NCBI GenBank assembly: GCA_053919585.1
Contig: CM132813.1
Length of the DNA stretch: 64,000 bases
DNA from: Euprymna scolopes
Lineage: Eukaryota
Direction: 5' to 3' (one strand)
Every line of letters starts with the position of its first letter. The first letter of the stretch is position 1. The notes under the pieces were generated by a model. That model saw nothing but the letters and a program-made list of their open reading frames with translations, was not told the origin of the DNA and did not search any database. A program made the translations under genes and the position numbers. Of the stretch, positions 394 to 7,305 are shown one piece after another.

Positions 394-839
394 ATCTTTT
401 AGTTTGATTTAAATAAAAATAATAGATATTCAGTTTGAGATTTTTTTTTTTTCTCTTAATTTGATAATTTTTTTTTAAATATATTTTATAGAGAGGACTT
501 GATTGCAAAAAAAAGCACTTAAACAAGACCTAAGTCTACTTTTTCGTTAATCTCTTTCTTTTTCATAAAAGCAAAATTAGCTTAATGACATTTCTTGTCG
601 AAACAGCAGACGCCCACATTGCCATTAATCCTCCAACTACACCCACGGATTAAAGAACAGAGTCGCAGACAATGCAGAGACATTTTTAAGTTGAAAGCAA
701 TAAGCCAATAGATTAGTCGTTTGTGGTAAACCAAAATATTTGGATTTGTCATCTTCTCATCTTTTGAAAATGTGCCTGTGTGCATTCTATGTATAAGCCA
801 TGATCATCATCTGGATTTGGAGTTGATTTGAATGCTCAC

Positions 840-869
840 CTTAGCGTCAATCATGTGGTCTCGGTCAAT
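840..869 (-). CDS. Candidate 30-nt internal exon of an unidentified host gene (IDRDHMIDAK, phase 0-0)
   Basis: Minus strand reads cctatttcaacag|ATTGACCGAGACCACATGATTGACGCTAAG|gtgagc. Only frame 0 is open; the sequence is not repeated in the window. Confidence 0.5.
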
Positions 870-1008
870 CTGTTGAAATAGGATTTTCCCTTCAAACAAA
901 ACCACAACCCAAGTTTAAAACAAGTAATTTTGTGATGCTACAAGTATTTAGTTTTTCTATCGCATGACAGTCACTTTAACTGAACAGACCTGCAAATAAA
1001 AACTAACA

Positions 1009-1049
1009 TATTCGGTTGGTGCAAGAATTATCTTTGCACCAACCTAATA
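1009..1049. mobile_element. Ultra-short mariner MITE (MADE1/Hsmar1-type TIR tips only)
   Basis: TA-TTCGGTTGGTGCAA...TTGCACCAACCTAA-TA; resembles the TTAGGTTGGTGCAAAAG mariner TIR; TA flanks. Confidence 0.8.
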
Positions 1050-1088
1050 TCTTCTAACACTAGCAATCCATCAGCTTAGGGCTTCAAA

Positions 1089-1581
1089 CAGGGCTCTACA
1101 GACATATTTATCTTTAGTTGACCTTTGACAAGTAAATATTTTCATTTACTAGCCAAATCGAAAAGTTACAAGCCAAATCCACATAATTCTTGGAATACAA
1201 TATCTTTTTCTGTGACAAGTACATACATCAACATTTTTCTGTATTTTTTTTTTTTTTCAATTAAGTGTAATTCTAAAGATGCAAATTTTATGTTGAGACT
1301 TGAAAGTATAAAATTTAAAATTTATTCAAATGGTTTTTAAACAACCTTTGTTAAAAACAAAAAGAGTATATTGTTCTATTAAACTTTTATTGTTTAAATT
1401 GACTTTGCTTGTTTAAAAAATAATAATAATGGTTGAAAAGGTATTATTTTACTAAGTAATGAGCTTTGGAAGTTTGTGAAAGAAACACAATTGCCTAAAG
1501 ATAATCATTTTATTATTTATAGCCACCATGTGGAAAAATTAATTGCAAATAGGACTGTTTCACTTGCAACATAAAACCCTG
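1089..1581 (+). mobile_element. ~490-bp non-autonomous hAT-type MITE (family A)
   Basis: CAGGGCTCTACA...CCCTG termini; five further copies in the window. Confidence 0.85.
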
Positions 1582-2844
1582 CCAAAAGTCCATCTGTCTC
1601 TGAGAACTGAAACTCAACCAAATCTCTTTGCTTTTCTGCTGGAATCTATATATATATTACTTAGACTAAACTGCATGTGAGATAATCAGATAATTATCTA
1701 TGGACATGAGAAACTGACTGATCCTAAGACACACCATCTGATATAAACATTACTTTTAGAAAATCTAACATGGATCATAATTGCGGTATGGAATCTTATA
1801 TATAAGAGGAAATTATTATTTAAAAAATGTCACCCACTTTTGAGGTAGTCTTTCTCCCCTTTGCTAAGTATTTCTCTCACTGCAGGCTCATCATCTGAAT
1901 GCATTGCAACTATGGCCCCCCCCCCACTAAACATGCAGCATTGCACACGTAAAGATTGAAAGAAAACCAGTCATTTAATTAAATAACAGTTTATTTTATA
2001 ATAACCAAGAAATACTGCAATCTACACTGGCATCATGTGGATAGAGTACTAACTAGACATCTTCAATGACTGAATATCCGCCCTTTGCCATCAGCCCTTC
2101 AACACTACCTAAGATGGTTTGGACATACAGCTAGACACCCAGAAGGAGAACTCATTCATGAGGTTCTGCTTTCCTTCTCTACCTGGTTGGTGCAAAAACA
2201 TATGAAGACCTGAGTGGCAACAATCAAAGTCAACCCAGCAGTACTATCAGGCCTGCAAATAGTTGGTCGTACGACCTATCTCAGAATTGGTGAAAGTGAG
2301 CTGCAATATTCAGAGACACTGTACTTGCTGAAGAGAAAGCTGGGACGGACACTGCTTCTGCACTTTCTAGATTTTCTTAGCTCCAGGGAAACTATTCAAC
2401 AATCTAGAGGTAGGGAGTACTGGGTCGGGTCTTCAGATTTTGGTGGAGACCCCCTCAGATCAAAATATGCACTAAACCTAGGTAAGAATCGAAAAAATTT
2501 TGAAAAAAAATCAAAATTCATCTGTTGGCACCATTTTTTAGATTTTTAGGCTCCGGGGGCCCAAAAACGCCCATTTACCCATCTTTGCAAAAGAAGGGAT
2601 AAGAAATAGCAGTTGAAACTTAGGTATTTTCACTTCTTTTGACTTGGTCAATGAATTAGGATAGGAATGACACAATGTATAGCTAAATTGAGTTTTATTT
2701 TAGCATATAAAAGTCATTTTTTAGTACAAAATCGGGATTTTAGCACAATTTTCACGGTGATTTACACCCTAGATGTCATTCATTTTGCGGAAAGAAATAC
2801 CCTTAATCGTCCAGTGTTCCAAATCTGGTAAATTTTACATAAGA

Positions 2845-2874
2845 ATGTTTCTTACAAAGCTTCATACAAAAATT
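2845..2874 (+). CDS. Candidate first exon of the transposon gene (MFLTKLHTKI), or a 5'UTR exon
   Basis: ATG at 2845, phase-0 donor GTAAGT at 2875, and acceptor ttatatttctctttcag ending at 3137 in frame with the long ORF. Confidence 0.45.
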
Positions 2875-3137
2875 GTAAGTGTTATTTAACTAGTTTCCCA
2901 AGGGGCTTGGGGACTAGTATTAGTAGAATCGAATGATTGATAACATTGCAGTGTTATCTGAGAAAGGAGTTGTTTTGTTTATTTGGTCAGTTCAAAATGA
3001 GACTCTGAAATGTAGAGTCTCCTTGCTACGTTATTTTTATCATAATCATAGCACACAGTTGAAATCTCCTTGGGTCCATTCATATTTTTATTTGGGTCCA
3101 TTTTGAATATCCTGACACAGTTATATTTCTCTTTCAG

Positions 3138-4625
3138 GATTGTATTGAAGAGTCAGCCGGTAGAATGAGTAGTGTTGAAGCAGTGGAGCAGGAGGAGAAA
3201 GTTAAACATCTATCTCTTTACAGAGAAAGACGTTTTACTAAACTGGGATATTCGTGCTCCTCGATCCTCGATGCATTGCCTTACATTCGTATGGTTCTTG
3301 ACGAGACTCATCTCAGCAACCAACATGTCGAGATCGTGAGGATGTTACTGGATAGTGAATTGCTACTGAGTCAGTTGAACTGTCTTTCATTGTTCACGTA
3401 CAAAGTCTCATTACCTCTCCTAAATCTTGTTGAGGTAGGAACGCAGGATGATCTGTGCAAAATTCTTCCAAAGTTGTTTGAGGATCTTTCAGTTGGAAAA
3501 CTGGACACCTTGGAAGCGTACACTGTTCAATACAGACATATAGATATTGAGGAACCGACATCTGAGTTGGAGATAAAACTTTTGAAAGATATGTGTGTAC
3601 ATGCATCCAAAACGATCGAACTTCAATGTGGTAGAGAGTACGGATTTGGGCAGTACAATGACATTCGTGCCTCGCAAATACACAAGTTGACCGTGGAAGA
3701 GCGAAAAGACCTGGAGAGCAACAATGTTATGTGTGAACGAGAACTTGGAGTATTCGATCATCGTGCTATTGTTTCGAAATGTAGGAATAACAAGTTCAAA
3801 GCAAAATCCTTGAGAAACGATATGGTCTTGCACAGTGTGTCATTGGATGGTGCATCAAAAATTTCGACAGCAATTGCAAAACTTTTGAACAAAAGAGAAG
3901 ACGAATGGAATGAAGAACAAAAGACTCTTCTCCGTCTAAAAGTTGAAGAGAAGATAAAGAAAGCGATGAACGCAAGCAATTACACTACTAAATTGCTCAT
4001 AAATTGTAAAAGTTGGCGTGGTCCGTGTGTTAGTTCTGAAGAATTGATGTCGGTGCTAAAAGATCATTCAGAATTACAAGGGAAGATTGTCATGACTGAG
4101 TTAGCATATTACAGAGACACCCACAAATCAGATGTAACTGCAAATCCTGAACTATTCAAACTCAACAAAATCACTCATGAAGAGCGACTTATGAATCTTT
4201 GCGCACTCCTGGATGGTTGCCCGGTATCCACAAGAATTCCTCTGCGCACTAATGATGATGCCCTAAAAGCCATCACTTGCATTCCACAAGTTGCAGAGGA
4301 AATGGTTGAGTTACCTTTAATCCTGAATGTGAATCAGATGTGTGTGGTGTTGTGGACAGTAAAGGGGGTGCCAACATGGTTTCTGGGGTACTGTACTAAA
4401 ATCCTAGACAACCAGAAATACGAAATTGAACATTTGGAGCGTGTTTATGAAAGGAAGAACTTAAAATGGAGGTACCCAAACCCAGATGATAAGCAAACTA
4501 TTGATGCAGATCAAATTGTCGAATGCGAAATCAATGGAGACTGGGATGTTCTTTCGGACCGAAACATGCAATTCACACTGCACAACCACAAAGAGATTGC
4601 AGCCAAGTTTGATGGATTATTGTAG
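3138..4625 (+). CDS. Transposase-like protein: C-terminal half of a hAT-like DDE fold, coiled coil, CKxWxGP domain and C-terminal Tudor/SH3-like barrel
   Basis: Uninterrupted ORF (ATG 3165; frame open from the acceptor at 3138) inside TIRs. ERRF resembles the hAT RW motif; SNNVMCERELG (E191) resembles the hAT SxxxERxFS catalytic-E motif; WFLGY...YEIEHL...WRYP...D...QI is a barrel-type pattern. CpG-rich relative to the flanks. Confidence 0.7.
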   Translation, partial: DCIEESAGRMSSVEAVEQEEKVKHLSLYRERRFTKLGYSCSSILDALPYIRMVLDETHLSNQHVEIVRMLLDSELLLSQLNCLSLFTYKVSLPLLNLVEVGTQDDLCKILPKLFEDLSVGKLDTLEAYTVQYRHIDIEEPTSELEIKLLKDMCVHASKTIELQCGREYGFGQYNDIRASQIHKLTVEERKDLESNNVMCERELGVFDHRAIVSKCRNNKFKAKSLRNDMVLHSVSLDGASKISTAIAKLLNKREDEWNEEQKTLLRLKVEEKIKKAMNASNYTTKLLINCKSWRGPCVSSEELMSVLKDHSELQGKIVMTELAYYRDTHKSDVTANPELFKLNKITHEERLMNLCALLDGCPVSTRIPLRTNDDALKAITCIPQVAEEMVELPLILNVNQMCVVLWTVKGVPTWFLGYCTKILDNQKYEIEHLERVYERKNLKWRYPNPDDKQTIDADQIVECEINGDWDVLSDRNMQFTLHNHKEIAAKFDGLL

Positions 4626-4692
4626 TGCTTGTAGTGTATATCTGAGTCACTTTTGTTAAGTCTGTTAAGCACTTGGAAATCATAAAAGGACG

Positions 4693-5165
4693 GGATTATG
4701 TCGATTTCGGCCTATTTTCAGCAATTTTAGGTCCAATTTGGCCAAATTCACCCCTAAAATTGCCCTTAAAGACCCCAAGACCTGTCAATAATCATGGTTT
4801 TCTGCCTTATATGTGTGTCTGAAGTCATTCATATCCGTTGGGAATGAACAAGGATCGATTAAGTGACTGAGAACAGGATTTTGGCAATTTCGTCCTATTT
4901 TTGGCAATTTTGGGTCAAAATTTGGTCTATTTCTCTTCAAAAAAGGCCCAAAAAGATCTGAGACCTGTATATAATCGTACTCCAATGTCTATTTTAGGTA
5001 TCTACAGCAATATATACCTTTATAAAGGTGGACGAGGATAATTTATGTGACCCAAGATGGTTTTTGTGATTTTTGCCTGTTTTTCGGCCAATTTATGGCC
5101 AATTTTGGCCATTTTTTGACCGAAATTGACCAAGAATACCACAAAACCTGTTTAAATACATGACC
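4693..5165 (+). repeat. Diverged subterminal tandem array, 183-bp period, ~2.6 units
   Basis: Anchors GG(A/T)TT at 4693, 4876, 5059 and ACCTGT at 4780, 4963, 5146, each exactly 183 bp apart. Confidence 0.85.
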
Positions 5166-5989
5166 CTGTGTCATTTGAAACTATTTATATTCATTAATGG
5201 GCATTGGAGATACACAAGAAGCAAAATTATGCCTTGAAATCACTCATATTGACATTTCGGACACATATTTCTTGAAAAACCAACCCCAGATCTAAAAAAT
5301 GCCGCCAACAGATGAAAAAATTTTTTTTTTATTTTGACCTAGATACACCTTATATTTTGATTTGAGGGGGTCCCCACCAGATTTTGAAGATGTGACCTTT
5401 TTTCGACCCAGTACTCCCTACCTCTACTCATAAGAGTATTTCTATTGTCCTGTTCATTTCTTGCTAACATTATTGCTGATAACTTTATGGGGTAAGTTGA
5501 TTTACTCTTTTTAAAAATATTGGACTTACCTACATACTATAAATATAGTTACATTTAAACACCAATATAGCGATTCCTGGTAGTTATGACTCCCAGAATC
5601 ATGACATGTACTTCTGTAATATACCTTAGCTAATCGACATAATATACATTTGTTAATTATATACCACTGTGTTTGCCTTGATTATTACCGGTCTGCAAAG
5701 CTACAACAGTTCGCATCAAAAAGTTAAAAATGCCATTCCCATTTGTCAGCAAAAAAATAGAACAATGTAACAGCAATACAAACAATGCCAACTAGAATTC
5801 TTAATTGTTCACATAAAAGAAATTATGCTTAATTGGTAAAAAAAAATCTAAAGTATTTGCCAATTCACTAACATCCTCTTTGCTATTGGGACCCAACCCA
5901 GCTGATCTATTAGCACTGTAATTACATAACTGCAAAGAGAGTGAAGTTCTTTAAGACTTGCATGAACACTGATTTGGATTTGAAATAGC

Positions 5990-6130
5990 ATGGTCTTTGG
6001 TCCATCGTGATGGCTTGAAACAGTGTTACAATTGGTTTGTCACATGGGCTTGAAACAGTGTTGTCATTGGTTTGTCAAGCTGGTTTGAAACAGCATTGTT
6101 ATTGGTTTGTAATGTTGGCTTTCAACAATG
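5990..6130. repeat. Degenerate AT-richer copies of the 35-bp minisatellite
   Basis: Three to four units like GCTTGAAACAGTGTTGTCATTGGTTTGTCAAGCTG; alignable to the decayed edge of the 1-393 array (TTTGAAACAGTGTTGCTATTGGTCTG). Confidence 0.75.
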
Positions 6131-6820
6131 AAATAAACGTGCAATTTTTATAGATATGTTCGTTTGGGGGGGGGGGGGAACAGCAAAAAGAATTTATCAA
6201 TTTAGTAAAATCCTCTTTGCTATTCCAATAGCACTCAGTCCGTGATTGTACTAATTCCTTCTTCAGCAGTAAAATTTAGCAGATTAATTCATTGTCCGAC
6301 AATACAGTAAGCATAGAAATGGGATAAAAATAAATTAAGCAACAGACAGTGCATAGGTGGTGTTGGTGGTGGAAGATATCAATCAATCAATCTGTCTAAT
6401 AATACAGATCAATGTCAACTTTTAACACCAACAAAAAAATAAAAAATAAATAAAAAGGTAATAAAGAAGTTTGCCCTCTCAGCAGTTTGCGCTTGCATAT
6501 AATAATATTGACAAGTGCAGACAGATAAAAACTAACTACCTGGTCAGGTGAAACTATTATTACTGTTGCCTCCAGATTCAACATACACAGGTGCTTACTG
6601 CAACTCCACCCAAAAGATTTGCATTCACGACAAAATGTCTATGCTAGAGTCGTTGCCCATTTGTTTACAAGTTAATCCACGCATGCTTTGACTTGTCACT
6701 AATATTAAAATAGTTTGTCTTGGAATTTTTGCAATGAGGATTGATTTGTCATTTTTTTTGGATCATTCTCACTACTGTTCTCATGTCACAGTGTCGTTGG
6801 ATGTAACGATGATGATGATG

Positions 6821-7305
6821 CAGGGCTCTACATTGCAAGTGAAACAGTCGCATTTGTGAGTGATTTTTCAAAGTGGCGACTAGAACTAATGACACGCTTA
6901 TCTTTTGGCGATTGCATTTCTTTCATTGACAATCTTCCAAAGCTTACAATCAAGTTAAAATATCTTTCCACCTTTTTTTTTAATAAAACAAAGTTAAATT
7001 ACTTAAACAATAAAAGTTTAATAGAACAATATACTCTTTTTTAAACGAAGACTGTTTAAAAAACATCTGAGGAAATTCAAATGTTTATACCTTCAAGTAT
7101 CAACATAAAATTTGTTGTATATTTAGAATTACACTTATTTAAAAAAATATACAGAAAAATCTTTATGATGTACATACTCGTCACAGAACGATGTCATATT
7201 CTAAAAATCATATGGGTTTGGCTAGTAACTTTTCTATTTGGCTAGTAAACGAAAATATTTAGTTGTCAAAGGTCAACTAAAGATAAATTCGTCTATACAG
7301 CCCTG
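6821..7305 (-). mobile_element. hAT-type MITE, family A
   Basis: CAGGGCTCTACA...TATACAGCCCTG; reverse complement of 1089-1581. Confidence 0.88.

What the first reader, a model, noticed from the sequence alone, without database searches (positions are those of the whole stretch)
2405..5426. Young TIR transposon that fits no standard superfamily signature and carries an unusual spliced transposase-like gene with a Tudor-like tail
Seen: 23-bp perfect and ~140-bp imperfect TIRs starting TAGAGG; an uninterrupted CpG-rich frame of 495 codons; no 4-9-bp TSD (flanks CAACAATC and CTCATAAG allow only TA, or 3-bp ATC/CTC with one mismatch). Knowledge: hAT elements usually give 8-bp TSDs and have RW and SxxxERxFS motifs; Academ has TAG termini with 3-4-bp TSDs; Spy elements leave no TSD. 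Inference: ERRF (aa 21-24) and SNNVMCERELG (E191) mark the second half of a hAT-like DDE fold. It is followed by a coiled coil, a CKSWRGP...ELAYYRDTH domain (from aa 281) and a Tudor/SH3-like barrel (~aa 387-465) that could read chromatin. This may be a poorly described DNA-transposon lineage.
Basis: partly seen in the sequence, partly recalled or inferred. Interest (0 to 1): 0.75.

Follow-up and report, generated by a model that had tools for sequence, protein, structure and literature searches.

The report
Deletion copy of hAT-like transposon
This is a crippled, internally deleted copy of a young cut-and-paste transposon whose full-length enzyme folds like the hAT transposase Hermes but makes 7-bp target duplications and carries an unusual Tudor/chromo-barrel-like tail; the copy is ordinary, while the widespread, unnamed family it belongs to is moderately interesting.

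Summary
The sequence features are real: 23-bp perfect TIRs (TAGAGG...), about 140 bp of imperfect inverted ends, and a 486-codon ATG-to-stop ORF.

(1) The gene is not spliced. The window copy is an in-frame internal-deletion derivative (about 1.65 kb lost) of a 4,685-bp element. That element's single intron-less ORF encodes 1,036 aa, and the window ORF is the first 4-5 codons joined through a few junction codons to the C-terminal ~479 aa.

(2) The family does make TSDs: 7 bp in 20 of 20 other copies examined (19 perfect), with a hAT-like nT...An target preference. Only the window copy lacks one, and this remains unexplained.

Its AlphaFold model matches Hermes best (Z 15.1, 342 residues; next fold Z 10). 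The C-terminal barrel matches Tudor/chromo-barrel domains (Z 6-8, rmsd 1.3-1.9 Å).

The family has about 60 copies here at ~1% divergence, with one intact full-length ORF found. Relatives form 4,273 clusters in public data (molluscs, a copepod), with no Pfam domain and no informative name.

It is best filed as a divergent hAT-like lineage. Repbase and Dfam could not be checked.

The parts
2405..5426 (+). Whole element: a 3,022-bp non-autonomous 'class A' internal-deletion copy of a 4,685-bp hAT-like TIR transposon
   Evidence: blastn against the full-length copy L031:2970-7654: element 13-780 matches full 20-793 and element 780-3022 matches full 2441-4685, at about 97.5% identity.
2405..2427 (+). 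5' terminal inverted repeat, 23 bp perfect, starting TAGAGG; imperfect inverted similarity continues to about 2543
   Evidence: The genome holds 118 such ends at up to 2 mismatches, 96 of them perfect.
5404..5426 (-). 3' terminal inverted repeat, 23 bp perfect; imperfect inverted similarity starts at about 5290
3165..4625 (+). Truncated transposase ORF of 486 aa: the authentic ATG plus 4-5 codons, a few junction codons, then the C-terminal ~479 aa of the 1,036-aa protein. It lacks catalytic D375 and D453.
   Evidence: The offset is 550 residues (window residue n = full-length residue n + 550).
3177..3184 (+). Class-A deletion junction, in frame, shared by all class-A copies
   Evidence: The same junction is present in WIN, L014, L016, L018 and L023. 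DNA contigs of run X11 branch at 3177 and 3184 into the full-length sequence (table 7). About 16 copies in the genome carry this junction.
3735..3737 (+). Codon for E191, which is the invariant third catalytic residue E741 (motif NNxxxER)
   Evidence: Invariant in alignment A1. It sits on helix 738-750 of the model, after the alpha-helical insertion domain.
3861..4010 (+). Long single helix (full-length 783-832), the first part of a C-terminal extension that Hermes lacks
   Evidence: Models. The Hermes alignment ends at model residue 778, which corresponds to Hermes residue 609.
4035..4277 (+). Small helical module (CKSWxGP...YYRxTH; full-length ~831-921) with no fold assignment
   Evidence: Conserved C831, K832, W834, G836, P837, E862, Y866 and H870. 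Helices. No structural match was obtained for it.
4314..4580 (+). Royal-family (Tudor/chromo-barrel-like) beta-barrel, full-length ~934-1022, with invariant W955, W985 and W1010
   Evidence: PHF1 Tudor Z 8.2, rmsd 1.8 Å, 55 of 56 residues. PHF19, MTF2, MRG15, MRG701 and TDRD3 at Z 6.2-6.8. Foldseek probability 0.9-1.0 for Tudor domains, but E 0.1-0.5.
4705..5132 (+). Three degenerate direct repeats of about 183 bp in the 3' subterminal region, carrying TTTTGGCCAA-like motifs; candidate subterminal transposase-binding repeats
   Evidence: The binding role is an inference.

Best explanation
Window 2405-5426 is a non-autonomous, internally deleted copy of a young cut-and-paste (class II, TIR) transposon. 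The autonomous form is 4,685 bp. It encodes, in one intron-less ORF, a 1,036-aa DDE transposase built like the hAT enzyme Hermes: an RNase-H-like core holding D375 and D453, a CxxH motif, an all-alpha insertion domain, and then E741.

It differs from Hermes in three ways. There is no BED zinc finger. The Pfam hAT dimerisation domain does not match. A ~258-aa C-terminal extension follows the catalytic domain and ends in a Tudor/chromo-barrel-like domain.

Inferred mechanism, by analogy with Hermes: the transposase binds the TAGAGG-type TIRs, excises the element, and inserts it at staggered cuts 7 bp apart in nTnnnAn-like targets. That gives 7-bp duplications.

Shown: one deletion removed about 1.65 kb (codons ~6-556) in frame. 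The resulting 'class A' derivative was then copied to about 16 sites. It cannot catalyse its own movement because it lacks two of the three catalytic residues, so the mobilisation must have occurred in trans. The deletion probably arose by abortive gap repair after excision (inferred).

The 486-aa product is most likely a decaying by-product. Why this particular copy has no TSD is not explained.
For: - **Ends:** TIRs confirmed.
- **Copy number and age:** 118 TIR ends, so about 60 copies, with 96 ends perfect. Pairwise divergence is 0.9-1.3%.
- **TSD:** 7 bp in 20 of 20 other copies, 19 of them perfect. T at TSD position 2 in 13 of 20 (never G or C) and A at position 6 in 14 of 20. A sister family at 37% aa identity (L032) also has a TAGAGG terminus and a 7-bp TSD.
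- **Full-length element:** L031 with a 1,036-aa ORF.
- **Deletion classes:** at least 4 recurrent classes. The class-A junction is identical in all 5 copies checked and is in frame. Class B shows 5-nt microhomology, CAAAC.
- **Central segment:** an exhaustive search finds only 2 copies that keep it, and only one of those has an intact ORF.
- **Catalytic residues:** D375, D453, C480xxH483 and E741 are invariant in 22 homologues at 33-56% identity.
- **Structure:** AF2 model with pLDDT 74.7 and RNase-H topology. The top 11 Foldseek hits are all Hermes, probability 1.0. VIA: Hermes Z 15.1, rmsd 4.6 Å, 342 residues, model 264-778 aligned to Hermes 120-609, against Z 10.0 for ISCth4 and Z 9.4 or lower for integrases.
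- **Reads:** DNA contigs branch at the junction into the full-length sequence. Contigs from RNA libraries are collinear across 3146.
- **Selection:** private substitutions in class-A ORFs are 45 non-synonymous to 10 synonymous (dN/dS ~1.2), and 2 of 5 copies have stops.
Against: - No sequence-level link to hAT was obtained. Pfam PF05699, zf-BED and every other family are silent for all 22 members even at E <= 1. PDB sequence and profile searches are empty at E <= 10.
- The TSD is 7 bp, not the canonical 8.
- The Hermes match rests on a predicted model (pLDDT 74.7, rmsd 4.6 Å).
- Kolobok and Dada transposases have no solved structure for comparison.
- The window copy itself shows no TSD.
- The only intact full-length copy has a 7-bp duplication inside its 5' TIR and an imperfect TSD, so current activity is unproven.
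- Transposition, hairpin chemistry and trans-mobilisation are inferred, not shown.
Confidence: 0.85

Rival explanations
1. The family is not a hAT at all. It would be a separate superfamily-level lineage within the C/DxxH group (hAT, P, Kolobok, MuDR, Dada) that merely shares the Hermes-type architecture.
For: - No Pfam hAT dimerisation domain or BED match in 22 members, although the same Pfam model finds at least 150 classical hAT copies in this very genome.
- No PDB sequence or profile hit to Hermes.
- A 7-bp TSD.
- A 1,036-aa protein with an extra ~258-aa C-terminal module and a zinc-free N-terminus.
- A large family of its own: 4,273 clusters.
Against: - Hermes stands 5 Z units above the next fold and aligns through the insertion domain to its own C-terminus.
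- The TAGAG terminus, the CxxH motif, the D-78-D-288-E spacing (Hermes is 68 and 324, from my own knowledge of the Hermes literature) and the nT...An target preference are all hAT traits.
- TSDs of 5, 6 and 7 bp are already accepted within hAT (PMC12730594).
- Dada is excluded by its defining features (PMC3706591).
Confidence: 0.2
2. The truncated 486-aa protein is maintained as a functional regulator. It would be a dominant-negative or titrating inhibitor like the P-element KP repressor, acting through its retained oligomerisation helix and its chromatin-reader-like tail.
For: - The deletion is in frame and keeps the authentic ATG.
- 8 of the 13 near-full-length matches to the window ORF (97-98% identity, 12 of them deletion copies) have no stop codon.
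- The class-A form is present in contigs from oligo-dT RNA libraries.
Against: - Private changes are neutral: dN/dS ~1.2, 45 non-synonymous to 10 synonymous, and 2 of 5 sampled copies have stops.
- At ~1% divergence, intact frames are expected by chance.
- Other deletion classes (B, C, D) amplified equally well.
- The RNA-library contigs cover the non-coding TIRs at similar depth, so DNA carry-over or read-through cannot be excluded.
- The one raw poly-A run gave 1 read in 9.2 million.
Confidence: 0.1
3. One reading: a TIR element of an unplaced superfamily that leaves no TSD (Spy-like) or only TA or 3 bp (Academ-like), and that carries a spliced transposase-like gene.
For: This copy has no TSD, and a polypyrimidine-AG sits about 20 bp upstream of the ATG.
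Against: - 20 of 20 other copies have 7-bp TSDs.
- The full-length ORF is intron-less and continuous.
- RNA-library contigs are collinear across the supposed acceptor.
- The fold is Hermes-like, not PIF/Harbinger-like or Academ-like.
Confidence: 0.03
4. The C-terminal coiled-coil, helical and Tudor-like part is a captured host gene fragment carried by a non-autonomous element (transduplication).
For: This was my initial guess, because Pfam was silent and the ORF seemed unrelated to transposases.
Against: The module is contiguous with the DDE domain in one ORF in all 22 aligned homologues at 33-56% identity, and it has invariant residues of its own. It is also present in the sister family L032.
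Confidence: 0.02

Closest known systems
hAT superfamily; structural reference Hermes transposase (PDB 6DWZ, 4D1Q, 2BW3)
   Same: - RNase-H-like DDE core interrupted by a large all-alpha insertion domain.
- CxxH motif after the second D.
- Glutamate in an ER-containing motif near the end of the catalytic domain.
- Short TIRs starting YAGAG.
- Palindromic target preference, with T at the second and A at the penultimate TSD position.
- Internal-deletion derivatives mobilised in trans.
- Structure: Z 15.1 over 342 residues.
   Different: - 7-bp rather than 8-bp TSD.
- No BED zinc finger: there are no conserved Cys or His in residues 1-330.
- No Pfam PF05699 match.
- Conserved RRF where hATs have the RW motif. 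This equivalence is my inference and was not aligned residue by residue.
- 1,036 aa rather than about 600-700 aa.
- An extra C-terminal long helix, helical module and Royal-family barrel.
[quoted passage not shown]
   Same: They show that TSD length varies (5, 6 or 7 bp) inside hAT. hAT7 has the same 7-bp TSD.
   Different: Fungal hAT7 transposases are recognisably hAT by sequence and cluster with Ac and Tam3. The family here is from animals, is not detectable by hAT profiles, and has a different domain make-up. No direct comparison was possible.
Dada superfamily (Kojima & Jurka 2013, PMC3706591; PMC8869645)
   Same: 6-7-bp TSDs, a C/DxxH-group DDE transposase, a long protein, and occurrence in molluscs and arthropods.
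   Different: Dada has no TIRs, DxxH rather than CxxH, N-terminal CCCC and C-terminal CCHC zinc fingers, introns, D-68-D-176-E spacing, and strict insertion into snRNA or tRNA genes. None of these holds here.
Chromoviral and retroviral integrases (C-terminal chromodomain or SH3-like domain after a DDE core)
   Same: A small beta-barrel of the SH3/Royal type follows a DDE catalytic domain. In chromoviruses such a domain is known to steer integration by reading histone marks (my own knowledge).
   Different: Those are retroelement integrases without an insertion domain. Here the barrel is on a cut-and-paste hAT-like transposase, and its ligand is unknown.
P-element KP-type and Ac/Ds-type internal-deletion derivatives
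   Same: Non-autonomous copies arise by internal deletion, with microhomology at the junctions, and amplify using the transposase supplied in trans. Some encode truncated proteins.
   Different: No evidence here that the truncated protein has any regulatory role (dN/dS ~1.2).

Membership tests
hAT superfamily | [quoted passage not shown] | tested here: met
   Invariant D375, D453 and E741. The model shows beta1-3/alpha/beta4/alpha/beta5 at 370-479, an alpha-helical insertion at ~505-730, and E741 on helix 738-750. Hermes Z 15.1 over 342 residues.
hAT superfamily | C/DxxH motif shortly after the second D | tested here: met
   C480 and H483 are invariant in 22 sequences. This motif is shared with P, Kolobok, MuDR and Dada (PMC8869645), so it is not specific to hAT.
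hAT superfamily | C-terminal hAT dimerisation domain (Pfam PF05699, Dimer_Tnp_hAT) | tested here: not met
   No hit at E <= 1 in any of 22 members, while the same model finds at least 150 copies in this genome. Structurally, the segment up to residue 778 does align with the Hermes C-terminus.
hAT superfamily | N-terminal BED zinc finger | tested here: not met
   No Pfam zf-BED hit. There are no invariant or nearly invariant Cys or His in residues 1-330 of A1.
hAT superfamily | 8-bp TSD with consensus nTnnnnAn | tested here: not met
   The TSD is 7 bp in 20 of 20 copies. The preference is T at position 2 (13 of 20) and A at position 6 (14 of 20), the analogous pattern one base shorter. hAT5, hAT6 and hAT7 show that this feature is not absolute (PMC12730594).
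hAT superfamily | Short TIRs (about 10-25 bp) beginning YARNG | tested here: met
   23-bp perfect TIR starting TAGAGG. The sister family starts TAGAGGGC. The YARNG consensus is from my own knowledge.
hAT superfamily | Significant sequence or profile similarity to established hAT transposases | tested here: not met
   phmmer and hmmsearch against PDB (which includes Hermes) are empty at E <= 10. HHpred-type profile-profile comparison and Repbase/Dfam were not available.
Dada superfamily | No TIRs; DxxH; CCCC and CCHC zinc fingers; insertion into multicopy small-RNA genes | tested here: not met
   23-bp TIRs, CxxH, no conserved zinc-finger residues, and varied AT-rich targets, compared with PMC3706591.
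Royal family (Tudor / chromo-barrel / PWWP) domains | Five-stranded SH3-like barrel superimposable on known Tudor or chromo-barrel domains | tested here: met
   PHF1 Z 8.2, rmsd 1.8 Å, 55 of 56 residues; PHF20 Z 8.1, rmsd 1.5 Å. About 40 of the 50 best matches to the isolated module are Royal-family or BAH reader domains, at Z 5.2-6.8. The Z values are modest.
Royal family (Tudor / chromo-barrel / PWWP) domains | Aromatic cage that binds methyl-lysine or methyl-arginine | not testable with these tools
No Pfam Tudor or chromo hit.

The most novel reading that the evidence does not exclude
The family is a so-far-unnamed, metazoan-wide lineage of Hermes-fold transposons, of new hAT subgroup or sister-superfamily rank. 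Its transposase has swapped the BED finger for a helical N-terminus and gained a C-terminal methyl-mark reader (Royal-family barrel with three invariant tryptophans) that tethers integration to particular chromatin. That would be the cut-and-paste counterpart of chromoviral integrase targeting, with one natural copy that may still be active.
Probability: 0.13. Interest if true: 0.75.

Novelty: new variant of a known kind. Interest (0 to 1): 0.45.

Why it matters
For this window, the practical result is annotation. The 486-aa ORF should be masked as a transposon remnant and not called as a host gene. Public gene models already mis-fuse pieces of this family into cyclin A, ABCA and other genes.

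For transposon biology, the family is a large group (4,273 clusters at 50% identity) that Pfam, PDB sequence searches and source annotations all miss. It shows that the Hermes-type architecture tolerates a 7-bp stagger, loss of the BED finger, and addition of a chromatin-reader-like domain. If the barrel really reads histone marks, it would be a natural example of a DNA transposase with built-in chromatin targeting, which matters for understanding insertion-site choice.

A family at ~1% divergence with an intact 1,036-aa ORF also offers a natural enzyme to test.

Tried and rejected
1. **Captured host gene.** Rejected: the C-terminal module is contiguous with the DDE domain in all homologues.
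2. **The 6.5-kb copy (L018) as the autonomous element.** Rejected: it is a class-A copy with a nested LINE.
3. **Dada superfamily (6-7-bp TSD).** Rejected feature by feature.
4. **hATx and hATm.** They have 8-bp TSDs plus BED and hATC domains.
5. **Sequence bridges to hAT.** Pfam on every member, PDB phmmer and profile searches, and the exhaustive profile search (its top 150 are all family members) gave no bridge.
6. **A classical hAT from held sequence for hhalign.** None is present in the window or the fetched loci.
7. **Explaining the missing TSD.** No empty-site paralogue and no reciprocal recombination partner.
8. **Lineage-wide TSD test on a third family (L034).** The termini were ambiguous.
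9. **Expression.** Contigs from RNA libraries cover the TIRs as deeply as the ORF, and the raw poly-A run has 1 read, so this is inconclusive.
11. **Protein atlas.** It returned only unnamed mollusc and nematode clusters.
12. **Spliced model.** None was built or searched, because the ORF is a single exon.

Full report
**1. The observation**

The stretch 2405-5426 is bounded by perfect 23-bp inverted repeats, TAGAGGTAGGGAGTACTGGGTCG (none of 100 shuffles gives two matches). Weaker inverted similarity continues inward to about 2543 on the left and from about 5290 on the right. The ORF at 3165-4625 gives 486 aa from ATG to stop. Its CpG observed/expected ratio is 0.71, against 0.52 for the whole window. 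The flanks AACAATC and CTCATAA do not form a TSD.

**2. The family**

The 5' end recurs at 97-100% identity throughout the 5.9-Gb genome. A pattern census finds 118 TIR ends at up to 2 mismatches, 96 of them perfect, which means about 60 copies.

I fetched 20 other complete copies. Every one is flanked by a 7-bp direct duplication, 19 perfect and one with a single mismatch. Oriented on the element, the target shows T at TSD position 2 in 13 of 20 (never G or C), A at position 6 in 14 of 20, and G at position 7 in 11 of 20. This is the hAT-type 'T second, A penultimate' preference, one base shorter than the Hermes pattern summarised in PMC8721813. The absence of a TSD is therefore peculiar to the window copy and is not a family trait.

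Pairwise substitution divergence among copies is 0.9-1.3%, and 0.5-0.7% to the majority sequence. The family is very young.

**3. What the window copy is**

A protein search of the genome with the 486-aa ORF showed one 97%-identical match inside a 1,072-codon open frame, plus paralogous families at 26-38% identity in frames of up to 1,055 codons.

The 97% locus, L031, holds a 4,685-bp element (L031:2970-7654) with the same TIRs and one uninterrupted 1,036-aa ORF. The window element aligns to it in two blocks: element 13-780 with full 20-793, and element 780-3022 with full 2441-4685. About 1.65 kb is missing.

The junction keeps the authentic ATG and the first 4-5 codons. It joins them in frame, through a few junction codons, to the sequence ...EREEKVKH.... 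The identical junction is present in all five class-A copies inspected. This points to a single deletion event that was then amplified; about 16 copies in the genome carry it.

Other recurrent deletion classes exist:
- class B, missing 2248-3733, with 5-nt microhomology (CAAAC) at the junction;
- class C, missing 2063-3753;
- class D, missing 1442-3477;
- several singletons.

This is the classic pattern of non-autonomous derivatives of a cut-and-paste element. An exhaustive search (37 of 37 candidates scored) for the central segment that is absent from both class A and class B finds only two copies that have it: L031, and one on C11 whose frame is broken.

Reads agree. DNA contigs of run X11 branch exactly at 3177 and 3184 into the full-length sequence. 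The gene is therefore not spliced, and I built no joined or spliced model.

The 6.5-kb copy L018 is a class-A copy with a nested LINE.

**4. What the protein is**

Pfam is silent for the window ORF, for the full-length protein, for the sister-family protein, and for all 22 aligned members, even at E <= 1. PDB sequence and profile searches give nothing at E <= 10.

The word search found 36 unnamed homologues of about 1,000-1,060 aa at 32-55% identity. The exhaustive profile search found 4,273 representative clusters at E <= 0.001 and 648 at E <= 1e-30.

Host clues are a *Caligus rogercresseyi* (copepod) protein in one cluster, mollusc and nematode clusters in the atlas, and 'mollusc metagenome' RNA runs that hold the element. 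Some public gene models wrongly fuse pieces of the family into cyclin A, ABCA, BCKDK and PTB-domain genes.

Alignment A1 shows these invariant residues:
- D375, in HYDTTSR;
- D453, in MTDSxxKN;
- C480 and H483;
- E741, in NNxxxER;
- R572, R573 and F574, within the ERRFxKLG motif.

The AlphaFold2 model (pLDDT 74.7) places D375 on beta1 and D453 after beta4 of an RNase-H-like core (370-479). An all-alpha insertion follows at about 505-730, and E741 lies on the next helix.
- Foldseek's top 11 PDB hits are all Hermes (E ~1e-4, probability 1.0). RAG1, ISCth4 and Transib come far behind.
- VIA-align gives Hermes 6DWZ_A Z 15.1, rmsd 4.6 Å, 342 aligned residues, model 264-778 aligned to Hermes 120-609. 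ISCth4 scores Z 10.0 and retroviral integrases Z 9.4 or lower.

**5. The C-terminal extension**

The Hermes alignment ends at model residue 778. The remaining ~258 residues have no counterpart in Hermes. They comprise a long helix (783-832), a small helical module with the conserved CKSWxGP...YYRxTH residues (~831-921), and a beta-barrel (~934-1022).

In the whole-protein search the barrel matches the PHF1 Tudor domain (Z 8.2, rmsd 1.8 Å, 55 of 56 residues) as well as PHF20 and SGF29.

I also folded the module alone from the window's own sequence (pLDDT 82.8). About 40 of its best 50 matches among 48,161 PDB representatives are Royal-family or BAH reader domains:
- MRG701 and MRG15 chromo-barrels, Z 6.8 and 6.4;
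- PWWP, Z 6.6;
- PHF19 Tudor, Z 6.4, rmsd 1.9 Å;
- MTF2, rmsd 1.3 Å;
- TDRD3, SMN, SAWADEE and BAH.

Foldseek gives probability 0.9-1.0 for Tudor domains, but E values of only 0.1-0.5.

The fold call is therefore reasonable but not strong (Z below 8 for the isolated module). Function is not shown. W955, W985 and W1010 are invariant and could form an aromatic cage, but I could not test the geometry. The helical module has no assigned fold.

**6. Comparison with known groups**

- **hAT features met:** DDE on an RNase-H fold with an alpha-helical insertion, CxxH, a TAGAG terminus, and the target preference.
- **hAT features not met:** 8-bp TSD, BED finger, Pfam hATC, and any sequence or profile similarity. 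The PF05699 model does find at least 150 classical hAT copies in this same genome, so the miss is real divergence and not a failure of the tool.
- **TSD length:** it is not decisive. hAT5, hAT6 and, since 2025, the fungal hAT7 group are accepted within hAT (PMC12730594).
- **Dada:** it also makes 6-7-bp TSDs and occurs in molluscs and arthropods. It is excluded because it has no TIRs, DxxH, CCCC and CCHC zinc fingers, introns, and small-RNA gene targets (PMC3706591, PMC8869645).
- **hATx and hATm:** 8-bp TSDs with BED and hATC domains (PMC8721813).

A sister family in this genome (L032, 37% aa identity, 5,188 bp) shares the TAGAGG terminus and the 7-bp TSD, so these traits belong to the lineage. 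A third family (L034) was ambiguous.

I therefore call it a divergent hAT-like lineage that works like a hAT. Formal membership is left open because several defining features fail. Repbase, Dfam and HHpred were not available, so I cannot exclude that curated repeat libraries already hold it.

**7. The truncated product and activity**

The window ORF lacks D375 and D453, so it cannot catalyse transposition.

Private substitutions in five class-A ORFs plus the corresponding part of L031 are 45 non-synonymous to 10 synonymous (dN/dS ~1.2). Two of the five class-A ORFs carry stops. This is neutral decay, so a KP-like regulator role is not supported, although the sample is too small to exclude it.

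Expression is unresolved. Contigs from RNA libraries cover the whole element, including the TIRs, and one raw poly-A run has a single read in 9.2 million.

The only intact full-length ORF found (L031) sits in an element with a 7-bp tandem duplication inside its 5' TIR and an imperfect TSD.

**8. What remains unexplained**

The missing TSD of the window copy is not explained. I found no empty-site paralogue. I also found no reciprocal partner ends that an inversion or translocation between two copies would leave (the second search recovered L018's unrelated site, which serves as a positive control). Remaining possibilities are a deletion between two direct copies, loss of flanking DNA, aberrant transposition, or an assembly error.

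- The window's 467 N positions lie outside the feature and were left alone.

**10. Verdict**

The copy in the window is an ordinary dead transposon derivative. The family behind it is a young, low-copy member of a large, unannotated hAT-like lineage with a 7-bp TSD and a Royal-family-like C-terminal domain. I rate it a new variant of a known kind, of moderate interest.

Noticed in passing
L031:2970-7654 (G000:C31:47173969-47178653): This is the only copy found with an intact 1,036-aa ORF. It has a 7-bp tandem duplication (GTACTGG twice) inside its 5' TIR and an imperfect TSD (ATAGTTG against TAGTTAG). In the shared C-terminal half it differs from the class-A majority by 14 non-synonymous and 0 synonymous changes.
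   Followed up: partly
L018:~3860-6890: A LINE with a 1,010-aa ORF (RVT_1 plus Exo_endo_phos) is nested in a class-A copy downstream of its ORF. This accounts for the 6.47-kb length of that copy.
   Followed up: yes
L032:4058-9245 and L034:2549-7182: These are paralogous families of the same lineage. L032 (37% aa identity) has inverted similarity reaching at least 480 bp inward, TAGAGGGC termini and a 7-bp TSD. L034 (~30% identity) has ~250-bp TIRs at 96% identity, a different terminus (AAGTGATTTT) and no clear TSD.
   Followed up: partly
window 2405-5426, public runs X1-X16: Runs labelled with at least six coded organisms (A-F), plus 'mollusc metagenome' and 'invertebrate metagenome' RNA libraries, hold 65-80% of the element's 31-mers. 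This means near-identical copies under several organism labels. They could be sibling species or horizontal transfer, and this was not resolved.
   Followed up: no
window 4705-5132: Three degenerate direct repeats of about 183 bp (starting at 4705, 4888 and 5071) with TTTTGGCCAA-like short motifs lie in the 3' subterminal region. They may be subterminal transposase-binding repeats.
   Followed up: partly
window 2105-2404 and 5427-5726: Both flanks of the element are old dispersed repeats of different families. The left flank has hits at 67-84% identity. The right flank belongs to a family with more than 1,500 candidate copies at ~75% identity. The element therefore sits in repeat-rich DNA.
   Followed up: no
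proteins P0090, P0104, P0095, P0163 (public gene models): Pieces of this transposase family are fused into predicted cyclin A, ABCA-type transporter, BCKDK-like kinase and PTB-domain proteins. These are most likely annotation chimeras from intronic insertions.
   Followed up: partly
G000 genome-wide: Classical hAT elements (Pfam PF05699) are abundant in the same genome: at least 150 scored matches from 3,569 candidates, several in open frames of 600-690 aa.
   Followed up: no
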